Below, one piece after another: positions 2,711 through 18,400 of a DNA stretch of 19,132 nt (positions are counted from its first letter, which is position 1; the number at the start of each line of letters is the position of its first letter). The position numbers were made by a program, and so were the translations under genes. This stretch comes from Vitrella brassicaformis CCMP3155 (Eukaryota > Protista > Chromerida). The notes beneath the pieces are model-generated. The model was not told where the DNA came from. It did not search any database and was given only the letters and a program-made list of their open reading frames with translations. The stretch covers positions 1 to 19,132 of the forward strand of contig CDMY01000800.1 of NCBI GenBank assembly GCA_001179505.1, read 5' to 3'.

Positions 2711-3296
2711 GGATAGCGAGTGTCCGTATTATCCTTTCGGCACACGAGACAGCGGGTCACTGCGCATACCCAAAGAGATTTGTGTTTCATCAAGTCCATC
2801 TTGCTTCCACGCACTTCTACTCGCAGTCTACGATGTATCACCACCACCGATGATGGTTCTTGTTGCGCCTCCTCTGCGTTCGACTGAGAGCGTAGACAAC
2901 CTAGAGTCCATCGACCCTGAGGCACCAAGAGGGGGACAAGAGCGTCTGCAGGACCGCGAGTACGGCTCCTTCCTCTGTCTTCCTCCGTTGTAAGCATGGC
3001 GTCAAGAAGCTTAGTCTTGTGGGTCTTGTGTCTCTACACACGATGAGTGTATCCCCCAACCTATGAACCTCAAACACTGGGTCTGCGTCATATCGAACGC
3101 TGACAGTCTTGTCCTATGTCTCACGTCCGCCCCATCCATTGATAAGTTGACGGAATTCGAGTCATACTCGTGCACGTCACATATAGGGATAAAAGGCAGA
3201 TAAGTCGCCAGCGATTGTCATGTGGGCCCGACACCCTGGCTGCGCTGTAAAGTGTTCCACTTCCTGACAATAACAAGGTACAGCGCAACGAACACT

Positions 3297-6200
3297 TTAC
3301 AGCGCGTAGTGGATACGTGACGCAACGAACCTAGACAGGAACTTGAATACAGCATTGGTCTTCTCTGCCGCATTCGATGCCATGGCGGCATCGCCTGCAG
3401 GCCCCCGCGCAAACGACAAGCAGGGCTGCTGTGTATCGTCGGGATGTGCGTACGTACTTGCTTGTGGCGATTGATTGGCAATTGCCTCGAGCCTTGACTT
3501 CATGTCGGTGAGTTTCTCCAGCAGACGGGTCACCAAGCTACGCTGGTAGGTGAGGCAGCACTCATGTTGAGGGACGTGTAGGGCAGTACCACTGTACCAG
3601 CCCACTGTCTTACGTGTCCGTCTTCCCGCAAATTGATGGATCCGTCCTCAAAGTCACCCGCAATCAAGAGCTCCCTGCCCGTATCACAGCAAAACAGAGA
3701 CCACGAAGTTCACTTATTCATCCGCTGAGTGAAAGGCTGAGTCTGTGTGACTGACCTGCTCCAACTGAGTAATTGAGGGAGCTTCGACAGGGAGGCCTGG
3801 CTGGTGAGCCAGCTGTCTGGCATGTCCCAGACCCACATGTCTGCATTCCATCATAGATGCAAAAAACGACAGTGTCTTCTTCCATCTGGTTGGTGCTCAT
3901 TCACGCGTATGGTCCGTGTGATGTGCTTGCTTACAGTGCAGAAGCCCAACAGTGTGCGACACCGGTGTCTTGTCCGGACTGCACAGAAAGGGAGATTGCT
4001 GCCTCGCTGCATGCAGCTGCCTCTCTGTACTCCCTTACAGGTCGCTGGGGTCGATGTCGGCTGCAAAGGTCGCGAGAATGTCGAATGCCTTGTGCTGCGG
4101 GTCACCAGCCTGCCGCATCCTCATGGCCAAGATCGACATGTTCGAGAACGCCGAGCCGTAGTCGCCACCTCTCATGTACTGTGACGTAAAACACATTGCG
4201 TCTTTTGCCTGCCTCCCTGCCTCGCGTTTTCTGTATGTCGCTCTGCTCACTCACGTCCTGTGAAACGCGGATGTATTTGTCGATTTCTGCTTTGGGCATG
4301 GGCTCTGGCTGTGATGGGTGCCGCTCCACCACCCTCTCGCTGGCCCTAGCCTTGGCGAGTGCTTCCTGGTACGAGGTTACCTGCTGCCTCAGGTGGTCCT
4401 CGTTGGCCCGCAGCTGGGCGATGTCGCGGCCAAGCACCTGAATCAGCTCCTCCAGCTGCCTGTTCTTGGCCTCGATCCTCTGGTACACCTGCGCGAAGCA
4501 GACCAAACTCTGTAACGGAGTGCGTGCACCCATATACATCGCGCATCTTCCCTCACCTTGGTAGTGGTCGTGTTGGCGGCTGTGTATTCCTTTCGCAGTG
4601 TCATGTAGTCGTTTTCGAGCACTTCGTACTTGGCCTTCGCGTCCTTGTACATATCCAGAAGGTGTTGATACTTGTCCCGAGGCACCATGCCCTCGGGCGG
4701 CTGCATGATCTGGTAGGCGTCCTGAAACGCCTTCTTGATGTGATGCTCAAACAGCTCCTGCAGGAACCTCTGCACCGCACACAGATACGTATGAGAGACA
4801 TCGGCGACACCACTGCCGATAGAAGGTCTGACGCACCCGTGTCTCGTTTGCGATGTCCTGTACTTTGTCCCCGTGTTGTGTCTCCAGTACGCCCACGACC
4901 TTCTCCAGCTCCTCACTCATGACACGGTAGAACACCCACTCCATGTTGCCCTCCAGCTCCTGCAAACAGACAAGGCCACAGACGGGGATGTGACGGTGAC
5001 CGCGTCTACCTGTTTGATGGCGGCGGTGTATCTGTCAAGGTCGAAGCCGCCTCCACCAGATGCCCTAGCACCGATCTTGCTTGCCAGCATTTGAAAACTG
5101 CACCACGGCAGACAGGCATCCAAATGCATGAACAGATACACACGCAGCGACATTCATAGGATATGCACGCCTGTATGAGAGGGCTCTTCTCTCACCCTTT
5201 GCGGAAGGTATCGTCACCAAGTAGCTGCTGCACACCGCCACTCTCGAGCTTGTCCTGCAGAAACAGACGGACAAGAGCGGAGAGTTGGGGGGAGACTCAC
5301 AGTGGGATGTGCATGTCGATGTGATTGGGGGTTTGCTGACCATGATGTGTGCCTTGATGCCCTGTGTGACGGACGGTATCTCCCGCTCCATAAGCGACAG
5401 CATGTGGGTCCTCATCTCGCCATCCTTGCCCGCGAACACCTCCATCGCCTGCTTGGCGCGCGATATCTCTGTGGCGGAACCAGGAGAAAGGTCCTTTACT
5501 GAAGATGTCTGCTTTTTGTACTGGTCCCTTACTGACGATGAAGCCATGGAAAGTGTCCGCAATGTCCTCCTTCTGGATCTTCTGGGCGAGAGCGTTGTTG
5601 CGCGAGCGGTGCGAGTCGGCCGCCCTGTCGATCTCCTCTATTGCGCGGTTGGCCTCGCACTCGAGCTCTCGCTGCAAGAAGGGAACCAGGCCATCCTGTA
5701 ACTTGCCCAGCTGACCGATCCATACACACGATGCACACAGGCAACCAGCGAATAGAGAATCATTCATATTCATTTGCCGTCGCCTTCTCTTCTGTTCTCA
5801 AGAAGACACTCTCACCCTCTGTATGGTCTTGGCAGCGAACTTCTTGATGAGCGAGTTGAGCTTGAACTTGAGCCACTCTGCCGTTCCTTCCATCGGCTCC
5901 TCATCAGTCTTCAGAGCACCACTCGCCGCACCAACGCCATCACTTGTCGGCACCGCCGCTGCGGCGACCTTCCCACCTCCACCTCCGCCCTCCTGCAGTT
6001 GCCGAAGCAGCATCTGGAGTCCACCACCGTCATGGCCAGTGTCTTGTGCTGAAGCTAGTGCAGGTGGCATGGGCATCGGCACCAGACTGTCTGGCATGGG
6101 CATCGGCAGGGGCGGCCCCGCCGCCCCCAGGGGTACCGATGGCATGTCCTGCCCTGGTGCGAGTGGCGAGGGAGACGGGTAGGGGGTGGCGGGCAGCGCC

Positions 6201-9250: not shown

Positions 9251-10592
9251 ATGCAGCTCGTCTCCCTTGTGCCCCTCCTGCTATGTGCCGGCATCTCTGC
9301 GGGGAGCCTACCTGAAAGGAATGACACACGTTGACACTCGAGCGCACAGGCGATCAATCGTGTGTCATTTGAATTTTGCAATGCTTGCAGGTCTATGAGG
9401 TCGCTCCATCTTCACCGCTCGCTCAATGGAGGCTTCTGTTGCTACTGTCAGCACTCAGGCGACGACAAGAAGGCCTGGACAGCCGACTTTGATTCTGAAG
9501 TGACTTTTTCTGGCACACACGATGCGTGACCCTTCATGATTGGTGTGACCCAGGTGCCGGTCGAGGACCGCGTGTGCCAACCCGTACCTGCTGCCGCATA
9601 CCCGCCTCCTGACGGCGAGACGTGGACGGATGCCAAGCTCCAGTTTGCCATCGCCAAGCTCGACTGCCACCAGTACTGCATCACCATCAAGCCCTTTGCG
9701 GAGCACCCGGGACATGAATTCTACTACAACCTGATGGTCCTGCTGCTCACCGACGCATCCACACCCCTTCCCATCTTTCCATCTGTCTTTCATGAGCTCA
9801 CCCTTTCCCCCACTGACTGTATCTATCTGTCCGCCCATGTTGCAGGCGCTGTTCGCCAAAGGCTGCGACGAGGTCAAGCGCTGCAAGGGCGTGGAACCAC
9901 AACCTGAGCCGCGCTTCGCCGAGGTCCCATCATTGATCCATACAGCCGGATGAGTCACGCAAGGGACTCCCTTCCGTGTCCGTGTGTCTCTGTCACAGGT
10001 CGTCGAGACCAACCCGCGCAACGATGAGGTATAGCTGCGTTGTGGTCGCAGCAAGGCGTGCATTCTTCCATGTTCCCTGTCCTGGTCGGTTTCTCTCAGG
10101 AGATAGCCGGCCTCGCGGCCAAGAAGGCTGCTGCGGAGGGTGGTGCCGGCCCCGCCCCTCCTGCTGCACCGCAGCCCGCCGGCAAGGTCTCAGAGAAGCC
10201 GGCCGGAGAGACCCCTCCTACTGCACTGGAAACGCCGTAAGTGAGCAGGACACTTTTTTCAAGCCCTCCATTTCCATAAGAGACGGTGTGTATGTGCATT
10301 AAGGGAGGAGACTCTCCCTGAAGCCCCCCAGCCTGCCAGCCGCCAGTCGGAGGGTGAGAGAGCGGTGGAGGAGGGTGCCATAGCCCCCGAGGAAATTCAG
10401 CCACAGGAGCCCCCCATGGAGCCCGTGGAGCCCATGGAGCCCGTGGAGCCCATGACGCCCGTGGAGCCCGAGGACTCCAACTTCTCGATCGATGCCGACC
10501 AGGGGCAGCCCGAGGCTGGCTCCGAGGAGCAGCCCGAGGCGGCTGCCCAGCCTGAGGACTTGGACGAGTCCGAAGACATCGAGGAAGAGTGA
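9251..10592 (+). CDS. Putative secreted protein (about 285 aa): signal peptide, 8-Cys domain, Pro/Ala linker, acidic Pro/Glu tail; function unknown
   Basis: Exons 9251-9318 (MQLVSLVPLLLCAGISAGSLPE; needs a GA donor), 9391-9499, 9554-9736, 9846-9923, 9999-10028, 10100-10236, 10340-10592. All downstream junctions are GT-AG and in phase. If exon 1 is wrong, the start would be the ATG at 9395. Confidence 0.7.
10416..10469 (+). repeat. Coding minisatellite, 3 x 18 nt (MEPVEP MEPVEP MTPVEP)
   Basis: ATGGAGCCCGTGGAGCCC twice, then ATGACGCCCGTGGAGCCC. Confidence 0.9.
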
Positions 10593-10840
10593 ATGAACCA
10601 CACCAAGCAGAGCACAAAAAAGGACTGTCGATTCCGTTTTCGAGGGGTTACTTTTGTTTTCAAAAAGAGAGAAAGAGAGAGAGAGAGAAATGATAGCAGT
10701 GACTGATGGGAACGAGATCTTACGGACACGAATGAAAGATGGATGAAAACCATTAACAAGAGTCCACTGCACAGCACAAGGGTCACACACAAAGACACCT
10801 ATTCCCCACATTATCCCCTTCTCCCCTTCTCCCCATCACG

Positions 10841-13206
10841 CTACACGACAGGCTCCCCCCTGACCCTCGAAGGCTGCACAACGTTGCGGCACTCACCGAA
10901 CCTACCACACCACATAACCAACGCATACCGAAAACATCCCTGTGCGGGGGGGTTTGGCATCCATGGGCGGTGGGTTGCTCACCCGACACGTATGGGGCCC
11001 TTCTCGGCGTAGCCCGTCATAACCACTGCACACACGCACACACACCACGCACGCACAAGCGATGCACAGACCAACAGACTGGCCATGGGGCGTGTGTAGT
11101 ATTCTGAGCATGTCTGACCTTCATCGCCATCCTCGAGAAACTTCCTCTCTTGACCTGGACACCACGCCACGCCCACAATCCACACCAGCTACACCAACTC
11201 AGTGTAGTGTATGTGCCTGTGAATCAGGGCGGACCATTGGAGAATCTGAGGGGCTCGCTGCCCGCCCACGTGAGTTCAAGCAGCGAGCCGAAAGAGGACT
11301 TCTCCTTCACATTCGTCAGACAGCCAGCCAGCCTCTAATGCACTCATAGTGGTGCGGTGCAGCGGGCGTACCTTTCCTGAGATGGTGCCGGTGCCCAGCA
11401 GGTCTCCGGCCCTCATGAGGCACCCATTGCTTGCGTGGTGCGTCAGCTGCTGGAAGATCGTCCAATACATATACCTACGCGACGCGCACGACACGACCAG
11501 GGAGAGATAAAGAAGGAGGGAGATGGATTTCCATAAACGACACTGACTGACCTGAGATTTGTTCTGCATATTGTTTCGGGTGAGTGGTCGGCTTCCAGCT
11601 TCACTGCCACCTGATAATTGATACATAAGCTCTCTGTCCTTCCTCTCCCTCCACGTATACACATCGCTGTTTGGTTGGCTATGTGGCTGCCTGCCTGCCT
11701 ACCTCTAGTTTGATGTCGTATGAGGGGAAGTCGACGCCTCTGTGTCTGAGGTGTGGGAGGGGCTCGGGGTCCTGCTCGGGCGCTGTACACCGAAAGGGCT
11801 CCAACGCGTCAAGGGTCACAACCCACGGAGATATCGCAGTAGCTGTCACATACACGGCAAACCCCACGACAACACAGCACATACATCCCCACACATGTGA
11901 ATGCATGTCTGTGTTCGTCGGAGTGTGAGGGTGTGCCTCTCTCTCTCTCTGTTTGTCTGCCTGTTTGACTGACTGACCGAAGCTCTTGCCGAGGAATGGT
12001 CCGAGTGGTTGGTATTCCCACTTTTGTATGTCCCTTGCCGTCCAGTCGTTCATGAGCACCAGGCCAAAGATCTTGTCCCTCGCCTGATCCAATGGCACAG
12101 GGTCGCCGGCAACGAACTCACCACCAACAAAGGACGCCTGCACACACACACGCGGCACACGAGGGACAGAGGGATATACATATGTGGTGACAGACAAGCA
12201 GACACCGGGAAGGCGACATTCATCATCGATGTACCTACCATTTCTAGTTCGAAGTCGAGGACCTTTGATGGGCCGAACACGGGCTTGTCGGCGTCCTTGG
12301 GCAGCATCTGACCGCACGGGCGTATCACAGGCTGACCTACGCGAAGGGATACAAAACGAGAACTCGCGCGTATGACAACTGCTTGATTCGTCCGCACGAA
12401 TATCCGCGTGTGCGACTGGACCTACCTGATGGAATGATGGTGCTGGCTCGGCCGTGGTAGCCAACAGGGAGATGCACCCTGCGTGCCGAAACAGATGCAC
12501 ACACATACATTGGTCGTCGCCCCCTCCGTCCCTCCGTCTCTTCCTTGTTGTACCGACCAGTTCGGCAGGAGTGGGTTTTCTTTGGACCTCCATATGCTGC
12601 CGACATTGGTGGCGTGCTCCTTGCTGGCATAGAAGTCGGTGTAGTCGCCGATGACGGCTGGCAGGTGCATCGTGACGTCCTTCTGCTCCACGATGGCCTC
12701 CTTGACCACATCCGGCCGGTGGCTCAAAGAGCTGGGGTGACTGTCAGACAGATACTGCTGCAGACGCTCACGCACCTCAGACCTACATACACCCACCACA
12801 CGCATCACCGGCACATGTATGTATGTATATCCGTTTGAGGGTTGCAGAGGGGTGAGTGGGTGTAGTGACTGACCATGCCTGGCGGCCCGCCATCATGAAG
12901 GGATTCAGATAAAACTGCAAAGTCAAGTGGCACACAGAGAACGCAAACGCATGAAACCGCAGAGGATGACCCATGTTTGACTCATGCACGACTGCGTACG
13001 TCGGCGAAGTACGGTGGCACTAGGTTCTTCTCTGCCATGACGCGCATGTCGAGGATCTTGTCGCCGATGGCCACACCGATGGTTGGACGAGGCATGCTGC
13101 TGCCCGTACGGCTGAACACACCGAAAGGCAGGTTATGCAGAGTGAAGTCCGTCCTCGGAAGAGGATTGGGAAACAGAAACTTCGGCAACGACGGAAGCGG
13201 AGCCAT
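10841..13206 (-). CDS. FAH: Fumarylacetoacetase (fumarylacetoacetate hydrolase), about 431 aa, 13 exons
   Basis: Exons 13000-13206, 12874-12914, 12558-12782, 12426-12478, 12239-12336, 11978-12137, 11703-11842, 11552-11610, 11372-11474, 11235-11304, 11119-11154, 10983-11025, 10841-10901, all in phase. Motifs: [100 protein letters not shown]. Confidence 0.96.
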
Positions 13207-13328
13207 GATCTGCTGATGAATCCTTAAACGAAATGCTTGAAGGATGATGCACTCGCGAGAGATCTGAGCTCGCAGGTAGGGACCTGGTGAGGAGATCGGC
13301 ATCGTCAGCAGTATCATGGCTCCGCTTC
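13194..13328. promoter_or_regulatory. Compact bidirectional promoter bounded by an inverted repeat that contains both start codons
   Basis: Arms 13194-13219 and 13302-13328: a perfect 16-bp core (GAAGCGGAGCCATGAT / ATCATGGCTCCGCTTC) extended to 26/27 nt with 1 mismatch and 1 indel; 82-nt spacer. ATGs at 13206 (-) and 13316 (+). Confidence 0.8.
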
Positions 13329-14161
13329 AAAGATTGAAGCCCGCTTTGTTCATGGCCCTGGCAGCGACAACCACGCTTTCCGAGGCGTTCGGACCGCCTC
13401 TCCTCCGCCGCCATCTCTCTGCCAGGAGGCGTCATCTTTCAAATGTGCATGCTAATGGAGGCCCGGAACATGTCGAGGTGAGTGCACGCTGATCTGCTTA
13501 CCGGTGATTTCTGACAGACAAACAGACTGTTTGCTTGCAGAATCCGATGGGGCTAACAAACACGGAGAGGCAGGTATCGCTGAATCAGCGTCAGACAGCC
13601 CTCTCTCTCTCATCAAGATCAAGACACAACAGCATCCAGCCCACCGCTGCCACATCTCTGCACTCGCTCCGAAGGCCCACAAGGCATGAGCCGTTTCCCA
13701 TCTCGATGAGCCTGACAGAAGTGCATTCGCGGCGGCAAGCATTGGCCAACATTGCCGCCCTCTTTCTGCCGGCCCTGCTCATGACGACAGCCGCCATTGC
13801 AGCTGACGAGAGTCAGCCTGGTTCCCCGCCGTCAGGGAGCAGTTCGCCTGATGTGACCACTGGCCCGTCGTCGGTTGAGAGTGAGGAGGAGCGTCTGAAG
13901 AGGAAGAAGCAGCTGCAGGAGGAGGCGCGAGGGGGCGGCAAGAAGAAATCCACCTCATACTTCGAGGACCTGGCGGTCAGTCAGTGGGTCAAGTGAGGGA
14001 GGAGCCACCAGAGAGGTCGTGCCACCGAGATCGGTGTCTTGTTTGTCTTTGTGTGTTGTGTGCAGAAGGAGCGCGAGCGTCAGGCGGGTCGGCGCAAAGG
14101 TCGGCTGGAGACGGTGGAGGACATGTGTGAGGTCATCGGCAGGGGGTGCGGCGGCGTCTGA
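13316..14161 (+). CDS. Small plastid thylakoid-lumen-targeted protein of unknown function (signal peptide + transit peptide + twin-arginine signal)
   Basis: Exons 13316-13477, 13541-13975 (probable in-frame intron 13574-13639) and 14066-14161. [25 protein letters not shown] (signal ending in the ASA-F-type motif), an Arg/Ser-rich transit region, then [28 protein letters not shown] (RR + hydrophobic core + AxA). Mature part is charged and ends [13 protein letters not shown]. Confidence 0.78.
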
Positions 14162-14562: not shown

Positions 14563-14697
14563 GGGGAAGCTACGAAAGGGAGCGTATATAAGTGAGGTTG
14601 GGGCAAAATACTATAACCACACAAAGATGCGTAACCAATTCAGTCGTCCTTGCTGCTATACATACACACACACGTAACTTATGCATCCACGGGGCAC

Positions 14698-14982
14698 CAG
14701 GCAGGCAGGCAGGCAGGCAGGCATGTGCACTTAAAGCGGTTTACAGGTGCATCAATCACGGGTCGACAACCCGAGTAGGAACACCCACTAGCTCAAACAG
14801 GGCACTAGCGATCGGGGCATCGTACTACATACACACCACACAACCGTCAATCCAATCACACGTCTCCCTTTAGAGGCCACTTGACGGACAGACAGACAGA
14901 CACGCGTCGAGCAAACAAGACTCCATTTATTCATTTACGGGTATGCGCATGTAGCCTGGCTGGCTGGCTGGCTGGCTGGCTG
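14698..14982. repeat. Tetranucleotide microsatellites: (CAGG)n 14698-14723 and (CTGG)n 14956-14982
   Basis: Read directly. Similar SSRs occur in many introns, e.g. (CCTC)n at about 17670-17702 and (CT)/(GT) runs at about 15221-15247. Confidence 0.85.
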
Positions 14983-15424: not shown

Positions 15425-18400
15425 TCACCAGGCCTGCCTCTGTGCGGCTGCGGCGAGCCTCGTACCCAGGACGTCTGGTGCGCACACCCCACCCGCATCG
15501 CCTGTAGTGGTGCCATTGGGCTGTCCGTGGGACTGGGTGTGGTACGTCAAGGGCGTCATTTGCCTCTGCTGCTGCTGGTGGTGCTGGTGGTGGTGGTTGG
15601 TCTCTGCAGGGAGTGGGGGCGATGGCGCTGACGCGTTGGTGTGGGTGGTGTTGTCAGGTTCGGCGGCCTCGGACGGCGTGGATGCCGGAGGGGACGGCAG
15701 GGGATGCACCGGCAACGAATGCACATGATCCAACTTGCGCTTAAGGTAGGTGGATACAACAGAGACAACAAAGACAGGGAGCGGGCATCCATGCATGTGC
15801 GTGACAATTATTAATACGACGGGTGTCGTTTGTACCACAGCCGCTTGTGTGTAGTGGTGCGACTCGCCGCACAGCAACAGCAACAGGGCCCGCGCATCCT
15901 CGTAAGCGCGTTCCATCACCAACCTACACAATACAAGACAACACAAAGCAACACAACACAAGACAGCAGAGGTGACTGACGCCTTCATTATTGTCTGGCG
16001 TGTTGGTGCCGTCTGTTTGCGTTACTTGCTGAACATGGGTATGGGTGTTTGTGTGGCCGGTGCGTCCGGCTCGCTGCTCTCCTGCTCGATCTTGTAACCA
16101 CACAGATCAGCAGACTCCTGCATATATTCACACGTACACACATAAGGTGGTACGTCTGTCTATAAGGTGGTACGTCTGTCTGTCTGTGAGGTGCCTGCCT
16201 GCCTGCCTGACCTCGTGTGCCCAGGCCAGCGTGTAGGAGGCGAGAGGCATCACCTGGGAGATGATAGCATCACATGGCCTCCCGCAGTACGTGTGTCAGG
16301 CGTCCATCGTGCATGTACGTATGTGTGTATGTGTGTTGGTATTGACCTTCCTGAGGTAGTTGAGCTTGATGGAGTGGAAGTGGATGGCCTCGTCAAACTG
16401 ATACACGTCACGCAGCCCCTCGCATATCAAACCTGCCTGCAATCACACACACACGCACACAAACAGACAGACATACACCGCACACATCGGTGTCACAGTG
16501 CCTGAATTGGTTACCAGGTGTGCGATGATCCAGTGTTGTGTGAATATCTTGACAGCCTCGGTCCACACGGCATGCAAATCCTCCAGGTCGTTCTTGTCGC
16601 ACTCGTCAAGACGCTTGTTGTACCTGCACAATGCACGCGTACACATATAAAGTCAACGTAGCGCACTTGGTTCCTTTGTTCCTTCTCACAGCGATTCCAC
16701 GGTGGTGTAGCTCTTGATGGCATTGGGGGCGATCACCGAACCGCACCTGATCGATCAGCAGACATGAGGGACAAAATAAAGGAATGGTCGTGTGGCCGCC
16801 ACATGCAGACACGTGCCCCCGTCCATGTTAGGTTTACGTGTCGCATGGCGTGGCCTCCGTGACGGTCTCCACGTCGGTCGAGTCGTCAACAACGTCCTGA
16901 AAGGTTGTCGTCCCTGACATGACAACAGGGGTTTAAGGTTCCATGTGTACATACTGCTGAACGTCTTGTGTGGGTGACCTATGTTGCAGTTGGGACACCT
17001 GAACCCTCTCGCCTCGTCCCGAGGCATCACACACCGACTGAAGCAAGCAAGCAACCAATCAATCAGTCAATCAATCAGTCGACCAGCACACAACCAGAGA
17101 TGAGTATGCGGACTCGGTTCTTCCTGCAGGTCCCTGCCTACTCGCATCTGCAGATGAACCGCCATCCCAGCAACTTCTCACGACGCACTGATATACGAAA
17201 CAGCCAACTAGGGCGCAAGTGGCCCATCGCTCTCTTCCTCCCCTCTCTGTTGATGCGTATGATGTGTGTTCGCTGACTGTCAGTGGATTTGATGAGGTCG
17301 TCGTCGCCGATGTATGAGATGGTCAGCTCGTCGCCCTCCTTCAACGCCACACGAGACCCTTCACACATGCGCACATACACGTGGAAATAACACATTCAGT
17401 TCTCGGGGGTTTGGTATGGCATACGCAAGACGTATGCATCGTTGTCGCCGTAGAGCCAGCAGCACGACGCCGCGCACGAATGGGCCATCAGAGACGTGCC
17501 TGCACTCATAACACACAGCACACCCCCTGCCGAAACATGCTCACACGCACAACAGAATCCCCCTCTCCCCTGTACACTCACGGTTGTACAGCACGAGCCC
17601 TTCAGCCTCCGTGTGATGACCTGACCGCACAACACGCGAAAACGCACATGCGGGAAGGAAAAGACCACTTCCCTCCCTCCTCCCTCCCTCCCTCCCTCCC
17701 TCTGTCTGTCCCTTTGGATGTACCGAATGAGTTGTATCTCCATACGATGAGCATCTTCTGGTAGTGCAGTGGGTGGATTGGGGTCTGGCTGCCCAACTCG
17801 TACCCATAGCACGTCCAAGGCTTCGTGCGGCCCTCCCCTGTCTCGCACAGGTGCACCCATGCCTGCAACTGATCATCCTTCCGCCGGGCCCCTCCTGCCA
17901 GCTTGCTGCTGCTGCTGATGCTGGCGGCGCTGCCCTTGCGTGTGGGTGAGGCGTCGAGGGGGCACAGCTGCAGACGCTCCACCACTCGCAGGACGTCGGG
18001 CGACGGCTCGGCAATCTCATCGGGGTCTGACCCAGACGCATGCATACAGACATATATGCACGCATTCTCACACCCGGCCAATGTCTGTGTGCGTGATCTT
18101 CTGCACGTATCGTACCTGGGATGCATTTATCGAAGCACTTGTGCAGGTCGCGTTGTGACATGTACTGGAGTGAGTAGAGTGCGGCAAAGTGCCATATGGG
18201 TGGCAGCTCGAGGGGCTTGTCCTCGTTGACCTTGACCAACTTGTCCCACAGCTGGGCATCCAGCGAAGGCAGCGCCACCAACAACGGCTCCTCCTTGTAC
18301 ACCACCGTACCCGGCGCTAACGCACGACGCGTGAACAGACACCCTGCAGACATTCACAAATCCATCCATCGAGCCATCGATCGGATGCAGGCATGTGGTG

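What the first reader, a model, noticed from the sequence alone, without database searches (positions are those of the whole stretch)
13171..13351. Mirror-image start codons: an inverted repeat gives two unrelated head-to-head genes the same 5' leader and N-terminus
Seen: each gene read 5'->3' gives TCATCAGCAG-ATCATGGCTCCGCTTC (FAH, -) and TCGTCAGCAGTATCATGGCTCCGCTTC (lumen gene, +), with a perfect 16-nt core through both ATGs. Weaker similarity continues to codon 12: [12 protein letters not shown] versus [12 protein letters not shown]. The ATGs are only 109 nt apart, and a small palindrome cluster (GCGAG-AGATCT-CTCGC, 13255-13273) lies near the symmetry axis. FAH has a roughly 8-9 residue N-terminal extension compared with typical FAH. 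Inferences: (a) one gene captured its start region and leader by inverted duplication of its neighbour's; (b) a symmetric bidirectional promoter or initiation element; (c) a transcript spanning both arms could fold and hide its own AUG, or overlapping 5' ends could form a sense-antisense switch coupling a cytosolic catabolic enzyme to a plastid protein.
Basis: partly seen in the sequence, partly recalled or inferred. Interest (0 to 1): 0.8.

Follow-up and report, generated by a model that had tools for sequence, protein, structure and literature searches.

The report
Start codon copied from flipped neighbour
In the alga Vitrella brassicaformis, a young gene without known relatives seems to have got its start codon and leader as a flipped 27-base copy of the neighbouring fumarylacetoacetase gene's start, joined to a 246-base copy of another gene's delivery-signal region; this looks like a DNA-repair patchwork, not a regulatory device.

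Summary
The inverted repeat is real. It has a perfect 16-nt core (13194-13209 / 13313-13328) and matches at 25 of 27 columns, and it spans both ATGs (13206 on the minus strand, 13316 on the plus strand). The 16-mer occurs nowhere else in the 72.7-Mb genome, so it is not a start-codon consensus. DNA contigs from two studies carry it, so it is not a misassembly.

Similarity stops sharply at the 27 nt.

RNA contigs end the FAH mRNA at 13246-13250. No contig spans both arms, so the hairpin and antisense ideas find no support.

New here: 13 nt after the plus arm begins a 246-bp segment (13342-13587) that is 98.4% identical to the 5' end of a PABS-domain gene on another scaffold. The plus gene is FAH-like to the left of a shared GCTTC and PABS-gene-like to its right, with a 13-nt snap-back hairpin between.

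Best reading (0.55): one microhomology-mediated, multi-template repair event built the orphan's 5' end, with FAH as donor. The plus gene's transcription start is unresolved.

The scan has noted similar flipped gene-start copies elsewhere in this genome; I did not test those.

The parts
13194..13219 (-). FAH-side arm: 13 nt of leader, the ATG (13206-13204), codons 2-4 and the first base of codon 5 (M-A-P-L)
   Evidence: It lies inside the FAH RNA contigs of runs X1 and X2 (13000-13250 and 13000-13246, no differences).
13302..13328 (+). Plus-side arm: an inverted copy of the FAH arm (25 of 27 columns; 16-nt perfect core 13313-13328) that holds the annotated ATG 13316 of the orphan gene
   Evidence: The annotated protein P0001 starts MAPLQRLKP.
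13000..13250 (-). FAH exon 1 as transcribed: CDS 13000-13206 and at least 40-44 nt of 5' UTR (13207 to 13246/13250) with no upstream AUG
   Evidence: RNA contig pieces. Pfam FAA_hydrolase_N starts at residue 24. Donor GT on the minus strand at 12999-12998.
13316..13477 (+). Annotated exon 1 CDS of the orphan gene (54 codons; signal-peptide-like, then transit-peptide-like)
   Evidence: P0001. The splice 13477|13541 is seen in Logan RNA contigs L006 and L007 and.
13324..13340 (+). Perfect 7-bp-stem, 3-nt-loop hairpin GCTTCAA-AGA-TTGAAGC. It accounts for most of the 13-nt filler (13329-13341) between the two copied segments
   Evidence: Such hairpins occur at 8.3e-4 per nt in 42 kb of this genome, about 0.017 for a 20-nt zone.
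13342..13587 (+). 246-bp segment (rest of exon 1, intron 1, first 47 nt of exon 2) duplicated at 98.4% on scaffold C667:719-965, at the 5' end of a PABS-domain gene
   Evidence: Its 3 substitutions and 1 indel are the 'variant' letters seen in DNA run X5 and in both RNA runs. The NCBI model is P0274.
13255..13273 (.). Small palindrome cluster in the spacer (GCGAG AGATCT GAG CTCGC); probably chance, by my own estimate
   Evidence: The spacer halves show no mirror similarity. No separate significance test was run on the cluster.
13541..13975 (+). Orphan gene exon 2; it holds a twin-arginine-like stretch [26 protein letters not shown]
   Evidence: RNA contigs and joints; P0001.
14066..14161 (+). 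Orphan gene exon 3, up to the stop codon
   Evidence: Joint 13975/14066 with GT..AG; sequence; P0001 is 230 aa.

Best explanation
The mirror-image starts are a mutational scar, not a device.

Proposed event (inferred): in an ancestor of the sequenced Vitrella strain, a break or stalled fork just upstream of FAH was repaired by microhomology-mediated synthesis that switched templates several times. It copied about 27 nt of the FAH start (leader, ATG, four codons) in reverse complement from about 100 bp away. It added a short snap-back hairpin. It then copied about 250 bp from the 5' end of an unlinked PABS-domain gene: most of that gene's signal/transit-peptide exon, its first intron, its 33-nt second exon and 14 nt of the next intron.

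Result: the plus-strand orphan gene now has a 5' end with FAH's AUG context and first four codons, fused in frame to a borrowed plastid-type presequence.

Shown: the repeat itself, its uniqueness, its sharp ends, the second duplication, the three-way GCTTC junction, and transcription and splicing of both neighbours.

Inferred: that this was a single event, its direction (FAH and the PABS-domain gene as donors), the repair pathway, and that ATG 13316 is the start codon actually used.
For: - The repeat is real and unique in 72.7 Mb.
- Similarity ends abruptly on both sides, as expected of a copied patch and not of an old palindrome.
- Contigs from two DNA studies span the repeat unchanged.
- The FAH residues after codon 4 (LPKFLFPNP) are ancestral, shared with Perkinsus and many other FAHs. 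FAH's sequence is therefore native right up to the patch.
- The plus gene has no relative at all in 5.8 billion proteins, and residues 71-230 are unique in the genome.
- 13342-13587 is 98.4% identical to C667:719-965. There the reading frame continues upstream to its own ATG and a fuller hydrophobic signal (MRPQDLLLQVLL+ALFMALAA).
- The three-way junction: the plus gene equals FAH to the left of GCTTC and equals C667 to the right of it. GCTTC is present in all three. A 13-nt insert replaces one T of C667 and forms a perfect 7-bp hairpin with the end of the patch.
- Template switching and polymerase-theta-type templated inserts are known to make reverse-complement copies. The inserts can carry mismatches and slippage errors, and a few percent derive from distant loci (PMC5453318; PMC5068794).
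Against: - There is no outgroup or second strain lacking the patch, so neither the ancestral state nor the direction is observed.
- The junction arguments (GCTTC, the hairpin) were noticed after the fact.
- Templated inserts in the cited worm data average about 10 bp and mostly copy from within 10 bp of the break. Here the patch is 27 nt copied from about 100 bp away, plus a 246-bp ectopic piece.
- DNA contigs of runs X3 and X5 pass 13342 without the fork that a second copy with a different left flank should cause. The C667 left junction therefore rests on the published assembly, on reading-frame continuity, and on where the RNA exon-1 contig starts.
- The plus gene's transcription start is unresolved. 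If it lies after 13318, the plus arm is not part of the mRNA's coding region.
Confidence: 0.55

Rival explanations
1. A simple local template-switch mutation made the 27-nt inverted copy. It was unrelated to the 246-bp duplication, which was a separate event, and its direction is unknown.
For: Short-range template switches that create inverted repeats are common and need no second template (PMC5453318). A second perfect 16-nt inverted repeat with a 32-nt spacer lies in the same scaffold at 3242-3305, whereas shuffles give essentially none of 13 nt or longer. This suggests that such events are frequent in this genome. The patch differs at 2 of 27 columns and the 246-bp copy at 1.6%, so their ages need not be equal.
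Against: Two rare rearrangement boundaries lie 13 nt apart, share the pentamer GCTTC and are bridged by a hairpin made from the end of the patch. Independent events would not be expected to produce that.
Confidence: 0.17
2. The direction is the reverse: FAH lost its own start and took over an inverted copy of the plus gene's leader and first four codons.
For: The residues before LPKF in FAH relatives are short and variable (1-11 aa), so replacing them would be tolerated. Vitrella's six residues (MAPLPS) are a little longer than the commonest forms (M, MS, MSG).
Against: The FAH-like part of the plus gene ends exactly where its C667-like part begins. A chimera is the derived state. The plus gene is an orphan and FAH is ancient.
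Confidence: 0.1
3. The arms are a functional paired element: a symmetric downstream promoter or initiation element, or a shared translational control sequence that couples the two genes and is kept identical by selection or gene conversion.
For: The core from -3 to +13 is perfect, and both differences lie in the leader. The genes share a divergent promoter of about 100 bp. Because the repeat is inverted, both mRNAs carry the same sequence, not complementary ones. The 11-mer ATCATGGCTCC is about 4-fold more frequent than its control.
Against: The 16-mer and the leader-plus-ATG combination occur at no other gene. No transcript contig spans both arms or overlaps the neighbour. The repeat ends sharply inside a codon. 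One partner is a lineage-specific orphan.
Confidence: 0.08
4. Chance resemblance of two start contexts, or an assembly artefact.
For: Both genes have an ATCATGGC-type context. A uniform model expects about 3 perfect 16-nt inverted repeats with spacers up to 200 nt somewhere in 72.7 Mb (my own calculation).
Against: The extension to 25 of 27 columns and the placement on both ATGs push the expectation far below 0.01 per genome (my own calculation). Contigs of two DNA studies and the FAH RNA contigs reproduce the sequence.
Confidence: 0.03

Closest known systems
Short-range template-switch mutations (four-point model; Loytynoja & Goldman 2017, PMC5453318) and their effects on coding sequence in yeast (Abraham & Hazkani-Covo 2021, PMC8604942)
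   Same: A short segment is copied in reverse complement from nearby DNA. This creates a new inverted repeat with sharp ends and replaces several neighbouring codons at once, with no need for selection.
   Different: Here the copy carries a start codon and leader from one gene into its divergent neighbour, so two unrelated proteins begin alike. It is also joined to a second, ectopic copied segment. No ancestral sequence is available to run the formal test.
Templated insertions and 'filler DNA' at repaired double-strand breaks (polymerase-theta end joining with snap-back synthesis, PMC5068794, PMC4912351; MMBIR, PMC8421209)
   Same: A patchwork of short templated pieces, microhomology at the joints (GCTTC), a reverse-complement copy of flanking DNA, a small hairpin-type insert, copying errors (one mismatch and one slippage in 27 nt), and an occasional piece from another chromosome.
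   Different: The pieces are longer and the local template lies farther away than is typical in the worm data (about 10 bp, and within 10 bp of the break). The pathway in Vitrella is unknown, and the repair enzymes were not examined.
Acquisition of plastid-targeting presequences by exon shuffling or duplication in algae with complex plastids (for example Euglena, PMC2920757)
   Same: The same signal/transit-peptide coding segment, with its intron, sits at the 5' end of two unrelated genes: the orphan on C800 and the PABS-domain gene on C667.
   Different: The copied block does not end at intron borders. Its left end is inside exon 1 and its right end is 14 nt into the donor's second intron. 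That points to DNA-level copying and not to recombination within introns. The missing start codon was supplied from the neighbouring gene.
Bidirectional promoters of head-to-head gene pairs
   Same: Two divergently transcribed genes lie about 110 bp apart from ATG to ATG, and the available RNA contigs show their transcripts do not overlap.
   Different: Known bidirectional promoters share short transcription-factor sites between the transcription start sites. They do not share a unique 27-nt block that includes both start codons.

Membership tests
Template-switch / templated-insertion mutation | Reverse-complement copy of a sequence lying nearby | tested here: met
   Arms at 13194-13219 and 13302-13328, with 82 nt between the extended arms.
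Template-switch / templated-insertion mutation | Sharp ends, with no residual similarity in the flanks or the spacer | tested here: met
   Global alignments of the spacer halves and of the coding flanks are no better than shuffles (p = 0.68 and 0.55).
Template-switch / templated-insertion mutation | Microhomology at the switch points | tested here: met
   GCTTC is shared by the FAH arm, the plus arm and C667:713-717, 1 nt before the 246-bp copy begins. This was noticed post hoc.
Template-switch / templated-insertion mutation | An ancestral or sister sequence that lacks the copy | not testable with these tools
   Every run that holds the locus is near-identical. No Chromera or other relative's locus could be fetched.
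Genome-wide start-codon consensus | The motif recurs at many unrelated gene starts | tested here: not met
   16-mer: only the two arms. 13-mer: 5 against a control of 10. 11-mer: 19 against 5.
Overlapping sense-antisense 5' ends, or a transcript holding both arms | RNA that covers both arms or both start sites | tested here: not met
   The FAH RNA contigs end at 13250 and 13246, and the depth bins show no other contig at or below 13257. Contigs show presence, not absence, so rare isoforms remain open.
Fumarylacetoacetase (Pfam PF09298 + PF01557) | N-terminal and C-terminal FAH domains | tested here: met
   Exon translations hit both families. The closest relatives are full-length FAHs of 55-68% identity.
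Plastid (thylakoid-lumen) targeted protein of a complex-plastid alga | A signal peptide, a transit peptide beginning with F, and a twin-arginine signal | tested here: inconclusive
   The sequence reads [24 protein letters not shown]|FGPP ... [18 protein letters not shown]. There is no Pfam hit. Atlas look-alikes are uncharacterized diatom and haptophyte proteins (0.92) and PsaN (0.83, a lead only). No targeting predictor was available.
Presequence exon shuffling | The copied block is bounded by introns | tested here: not met
   The left end is inside exon 1 (13342). The right end is 14 nt into the donor's intron 2.

The most novel reading that the evidence does not exclude
Vitrella may repeatedly build or re-head genes at divergent promoters by inverted, templated copying of a neighbour's start, sometimes together with borrowed targeting presequences. 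Under this reading, the case here and the other flipped gene-start copies noted in this genome are products of one recurrent, promoter-associated repair process, and that process is a real route to new plastid-targeted genes.
Probability: 0.2. Interest if true: 0.75.

Novelty: new variant of a known kind. Interest (0 to 1): 0.5.

Why it matters
How nuclear genes acquire start sites and multi-part plastid-targeting leaders after endosymbiosis is usually argued from distant comparisons. Here the joints are still readable at single-base resolution. One gene's AUG context and first four codons came from its head-to-head neighbour, and its presequence came from an unlinked gene, stitched at a 5-nt microhomology with a snap-back insert.

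If confirmed, it is a clear natural example that templated repair can donate a working translation start across a bidirectional promoter. It also gives a concrete pattern (mirrored ATG arms in head-to-head gene pairs) to search for genome-wide. It removes the more exotic regulatory readings.

Tried and rejected
- Genome-wide consensus: rejected by pattern counts.
- A larger decayed palindrome around the AGATCT axis: rejected, because the spacer halves are no better than shuffles.
- Protein similarity to codon 12: rejected. FAH's LPKFLFP is ancestral, and the plus gene's ALF belongs to the block shared with C667.
- Reading the plus gene's transcription start from Logan contigs: failed. The exon-1 contig appears to start at about 13342-13346 (depth bins), which coincides with the duplication border. 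It therefore probably reflects a graph fork with trimmed short ends, not a start site. Look-ups for P0001 in full and for residues 1-57, 11-57, 13-57, 16-57, 17-57 and 18-57 found nothing. Only residues 49-230 was found.
- Look-ups of the genomic exon-1 ORFs of both copies: nothing found.
Only 42 kb could be used.
- Chromera or Vitrella FAH models: they did not appear among the 120 best hits of a full-length FAH query, so the N-terminus of the nearest relative is unknown.
- Origin of the 13-nt filler elsewhere in the window: none found.
- Spliced models were never joined by hand. FAH was searched with exon 1 only, and the orphan gene through the database protein P0001.
Full report
**What is there.** The window is a whole 19,132-bp scaffold of Vitrella brassicaformis CCMP3155. 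The genome is 72.7 Mb in 1,064 contigs, and the organism name comes from the plus gene's database protein. The quoted sequences are exact. The minus strand of 13194-13219 and the plus strand of 13302-13328 align at 25 of 27 columns. There is a perfect 16-nt core (13194-13209 / 13313-13328), one mismatch and one 1-nt indel, and both differences lie in the leader part. The ATGs are at 13206 (minus strand) and 13316 (plus strand).

**Not a consensus, not chance, not an artefact.**
- The 16-mer occurs only at the two arms in the whole genome, plus one unrelated site at one mismatch.
- The 13-mer from the ATG onward is no commoner than its reversed control (5 against 10).
- The 11-mer ATCATGGCTCC is mildly enriched (19 against 5). 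It is therefore a favoured context, but a rare one.
- The leader plus ATG occurs at three other places, all CAGCAGCATCATGG.
- Single DNA contigs from two different studies (runs X3 and X5) cover 10500-13587 with no difference in the repeat region.
- In 42 kb of this genome I found two perfect 16-nt inverted repeats with short spacers, the other at 3242-3257 / 3290-3305. Composition-preserving shuffles give almost none of 13 nt or longer. Short-range inverted copying may therefore be frequent here, but the sample is small and contains the focal case.

**The similarity is a sharply bounded patch.** Read outward from the symmetry axis, the spacer halves align no better than shuffles (p = 0.68). 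The same holds for the coding sequence beyond the 16-mer (p = 0.55). The spacer palindrome reads GCGAG-AGATCT-GAG-CTCGC, a 5-bp stem with a 9-nt loop, and by my own rough estimate this is what chance gives.

**The genes.**
- On the minus strand, the exon translations hit both fumarylacetoacetase (FAH) Pfam domains.
- Runs X1 and X2 hold spliced RNA contigs. The FAH contig covers 13000-13250 in X1 and 13000-13246 in X2 and ends there. This gives a 5' UTR of at least 40-44 nt without an upstream AUG, so ATG 13206 is the first AUG.
- On the plus strand, the gene has exons 13316-13477, 13541-13975 and 14066-14161. The splices appear in RNA contigs and in Logan contigs L006 and L007. The product equals the NCBI model P0001, 230 aa.
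- P0001 has no relative in 5.8 billion proteins and no Pfam hit. Residues 71-230 are unique in the genome.
- Its N-terminus reads like a signal peptide followed by F (LSEA|FGPP). Further in there is a twin-arginine-like stretch. Language-model look-alikes are uncharacterized diatom and haptophyte proteins and, weakly, PsaN. 'Plastid/lumen protein' is therefore a reasonable but untested label.

**The FAH N-terminus.** A search with exon 1 found FAHs whose alignment to Vitrella starts at residue 4-6. The best named hit is from Perkinsus chesapeaki. Thirty retrieved FAHs carry LP[KR]F[LI]F, usually followed by P, just before the DFTIHNLPYG core. The motif is preceded by only 1-11 variable residues in most of them; a few have longer N-termini. 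Vitrella reads [15 protein letters not shown]. Only M-A-P-L is shared through the patch.

**A second copied block next to the arm.**
- A search of the genome with 13100-13480 found that 13342-13480 recurs on scaffold C667.
- Alignment shows that 13342-13587 equals C667:719-965 at 98.4%, with 3 substitutions and 1 indel, and with sharp ends on both sides.
- Those four differences are exactly the 'variant' letters seen in DNA run X5 and, beside the reference letters, in both RNA runs. Both copies are therefore expressed.
- In C667 the block lies at the 5' end of a PABS-domain (spermidine-synthase-like) gene. NCBI model P0274 starts [16 protein letters not shown]...NPMVLANTERQ and then splices at a GT inside the shared block.
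- Upstream of the block, C667 has its own in-frame ATG, giving MRPQDLLLQVLL+[11 protein letters not shown]. Its hydrophobic run crosses the border of the block.
- Only these two copies of the presequence exist in the genome.

**The junction.** The three sequences line up as follows:
- Plus gene: ...ATGGCTCC GCTTC [AAAGATTGAAGCC] CGCTTTG...
- C667: ...CCAAGT GCTTC [T] CGCTTTG...
- FAH, read on its own strand: ...ATGGCTCC GCTTC CGTCG...

The plus gene equals FAH to the left of GCTTC and equals C667 to the right of it, and GCTTC is common to all three. The 13-nt insert, together with the end of the patch, forms a perfect 7-bp stem with a 3-nt loop (13324-13340). Hairpins of this kind occur at 8.3e-4 per nt in my 42-kb sample, which gives about 0.017 for a 20-nt zone. 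A sequence that matches one parent on one side of a microhomology and another parent on the other side is the derived, chimeric one. This is my main reason to propose that FAH and the PABS-domain gene were the donors and the orphan the recipient, and that both copies arose in one event. These features were noticed after the fact, and no outgroup is available.

**Mechanism.** The mechanism is inferred. I propose a break or stalled fork upstream of FAH that was repaired by microhomology-mediated synthesis with several template switches. The pieces are an ectopic copy of about 250 bp, a snap-back insert, and a 27-nt reverse-complement copy of the nearby FAH start. Short template switches that create inverted repeats are documented (PMC5453318) and can replace up to five neighbouring residues in yeast genes (PMC8604942). 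Polymerase-theta-type templated inserts can be reverse-complement (by snap-back), are error-prone (about 1 error in 30 bp, including slippage), and about 3% come from distant loci (PMC5068794). The one mismatch and one 1-nt indel in the patch could therefore be copying errors and not a sign of age. The sizes and distances here are larger than is typical in that data set.

**Consequences.** The two mRNAs carry the same sequence around their AUGs, not complementary ones. A hypothetical RNA covering both arms would fold strongly (-69.6 kcal/mol, z = -6.1). However, no RNA contig covers both arms. The depth bins are fully accounted for by the FAH contig up to 13250/13246, and no other contig reaches positions at or below 13257. 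I see no evidence for a shared regulatory element.

**What stays open.**
1. The plus gene's transcription start. The depth bins imply that its exon-1 contig starts at about 13342-13346 in both RNA runs. That is the border of the duplicated block, so it most likely reflects a fork in the assembly graph with short 5' ends trimmed. This is my inference about the assembler. ATG 13316 gives a more complete signal peptide than ATG 13352 ([12 protein letters not shown]), and I rate 13316 as the true start at about 0.7.
2. The DNA contigs of X3 and X5 pass 13342 without the fork that a second copy with a different left flank should cause, although the right-hand fork at 13558-13587 is present. The C667 left junction needs raw or long reads.
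3. Whether this was one event or two.

**Comparison and novelty.** The class of event (template switching, patchwork repair) is known, and so is the spread of presequences by duplication. What is unusual is the outcome: a start codon with its leader transferred in mirror image across a bidirectional promoter into an unrelated gene, joined base-by-base to a borrowed targeting leader. Notes from this scan list other flipped gene-start copies in the same genome (s1-248667, s1-197160, s1-201966, s1-218431). I could not test them. If they share this junction style, the process would be recurrent.

Noticed in passing
window 3242-3257 / 3290-3305: A second perfect 16-nt inverted repeat (GCGCTGTAAAGTGTTC / GAACACTTTACAGCGC) with a 32-nt spacer on the same scaffold. 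Shuffles of the 42-kb sample give almost none of 13 nt or longer.
   Followed up: partly
L009 (G000:C667) 684-965: The PABS-domain gene is annotated to start at MALAATTT (L009:729). An in-frame ATG 45 nt upstream (L009:684) would give a fuller signal peptide, [29 protein letters not shown] transcripts of the same gene give ORFs that start at MHDTRLP, inside what NCBI treats as an intron.
   Followed up: partly
window 13342 and 13558-13587: DNA contigs of runs X3 and X5 break at 13558-13587 but not at 13342, although the assembly has a second copy with different flanks on both sides. X3 shows only reference letters at 13551/13555/13556, X5 shows only the C667-type letters, and the RNA runs show both.
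   Followed up: partly
window 13315-13317, minus strand: CATG is its own reverse complement, so the plus arm also holds an ATG on the minus strand. That ATG is in frame with FAH, 37 codons upstream ([10 protein letters not shown]...). A longer FAH transcript would encode an N-terminally extended FAH. The RNA contigs do not reach that far.
   Followed up: partly
P0002-P0005, P0155-P0170 and others (FAH relatives): A large FAH clade (Perkinsus, Cardiosporidium, many uncultured eukaryote-like sequences) has a conserved N-terminal motif LP[KR]F[LI]FP just before the Pfam domain start. Animal and bacterial FAHs lack it. Its role is unknown.
   Followed up: no
window 14692-14730, 14883-14903, 16170-16210, 16320-16336: Tetranucleotide-type repeats, (CAGG)n and (GACA)n, and GT-rich runs where contigs from many other loci pile up (depth 150-500). 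These are dispersed simple repeats that break every assembly there.
   Followed up: no
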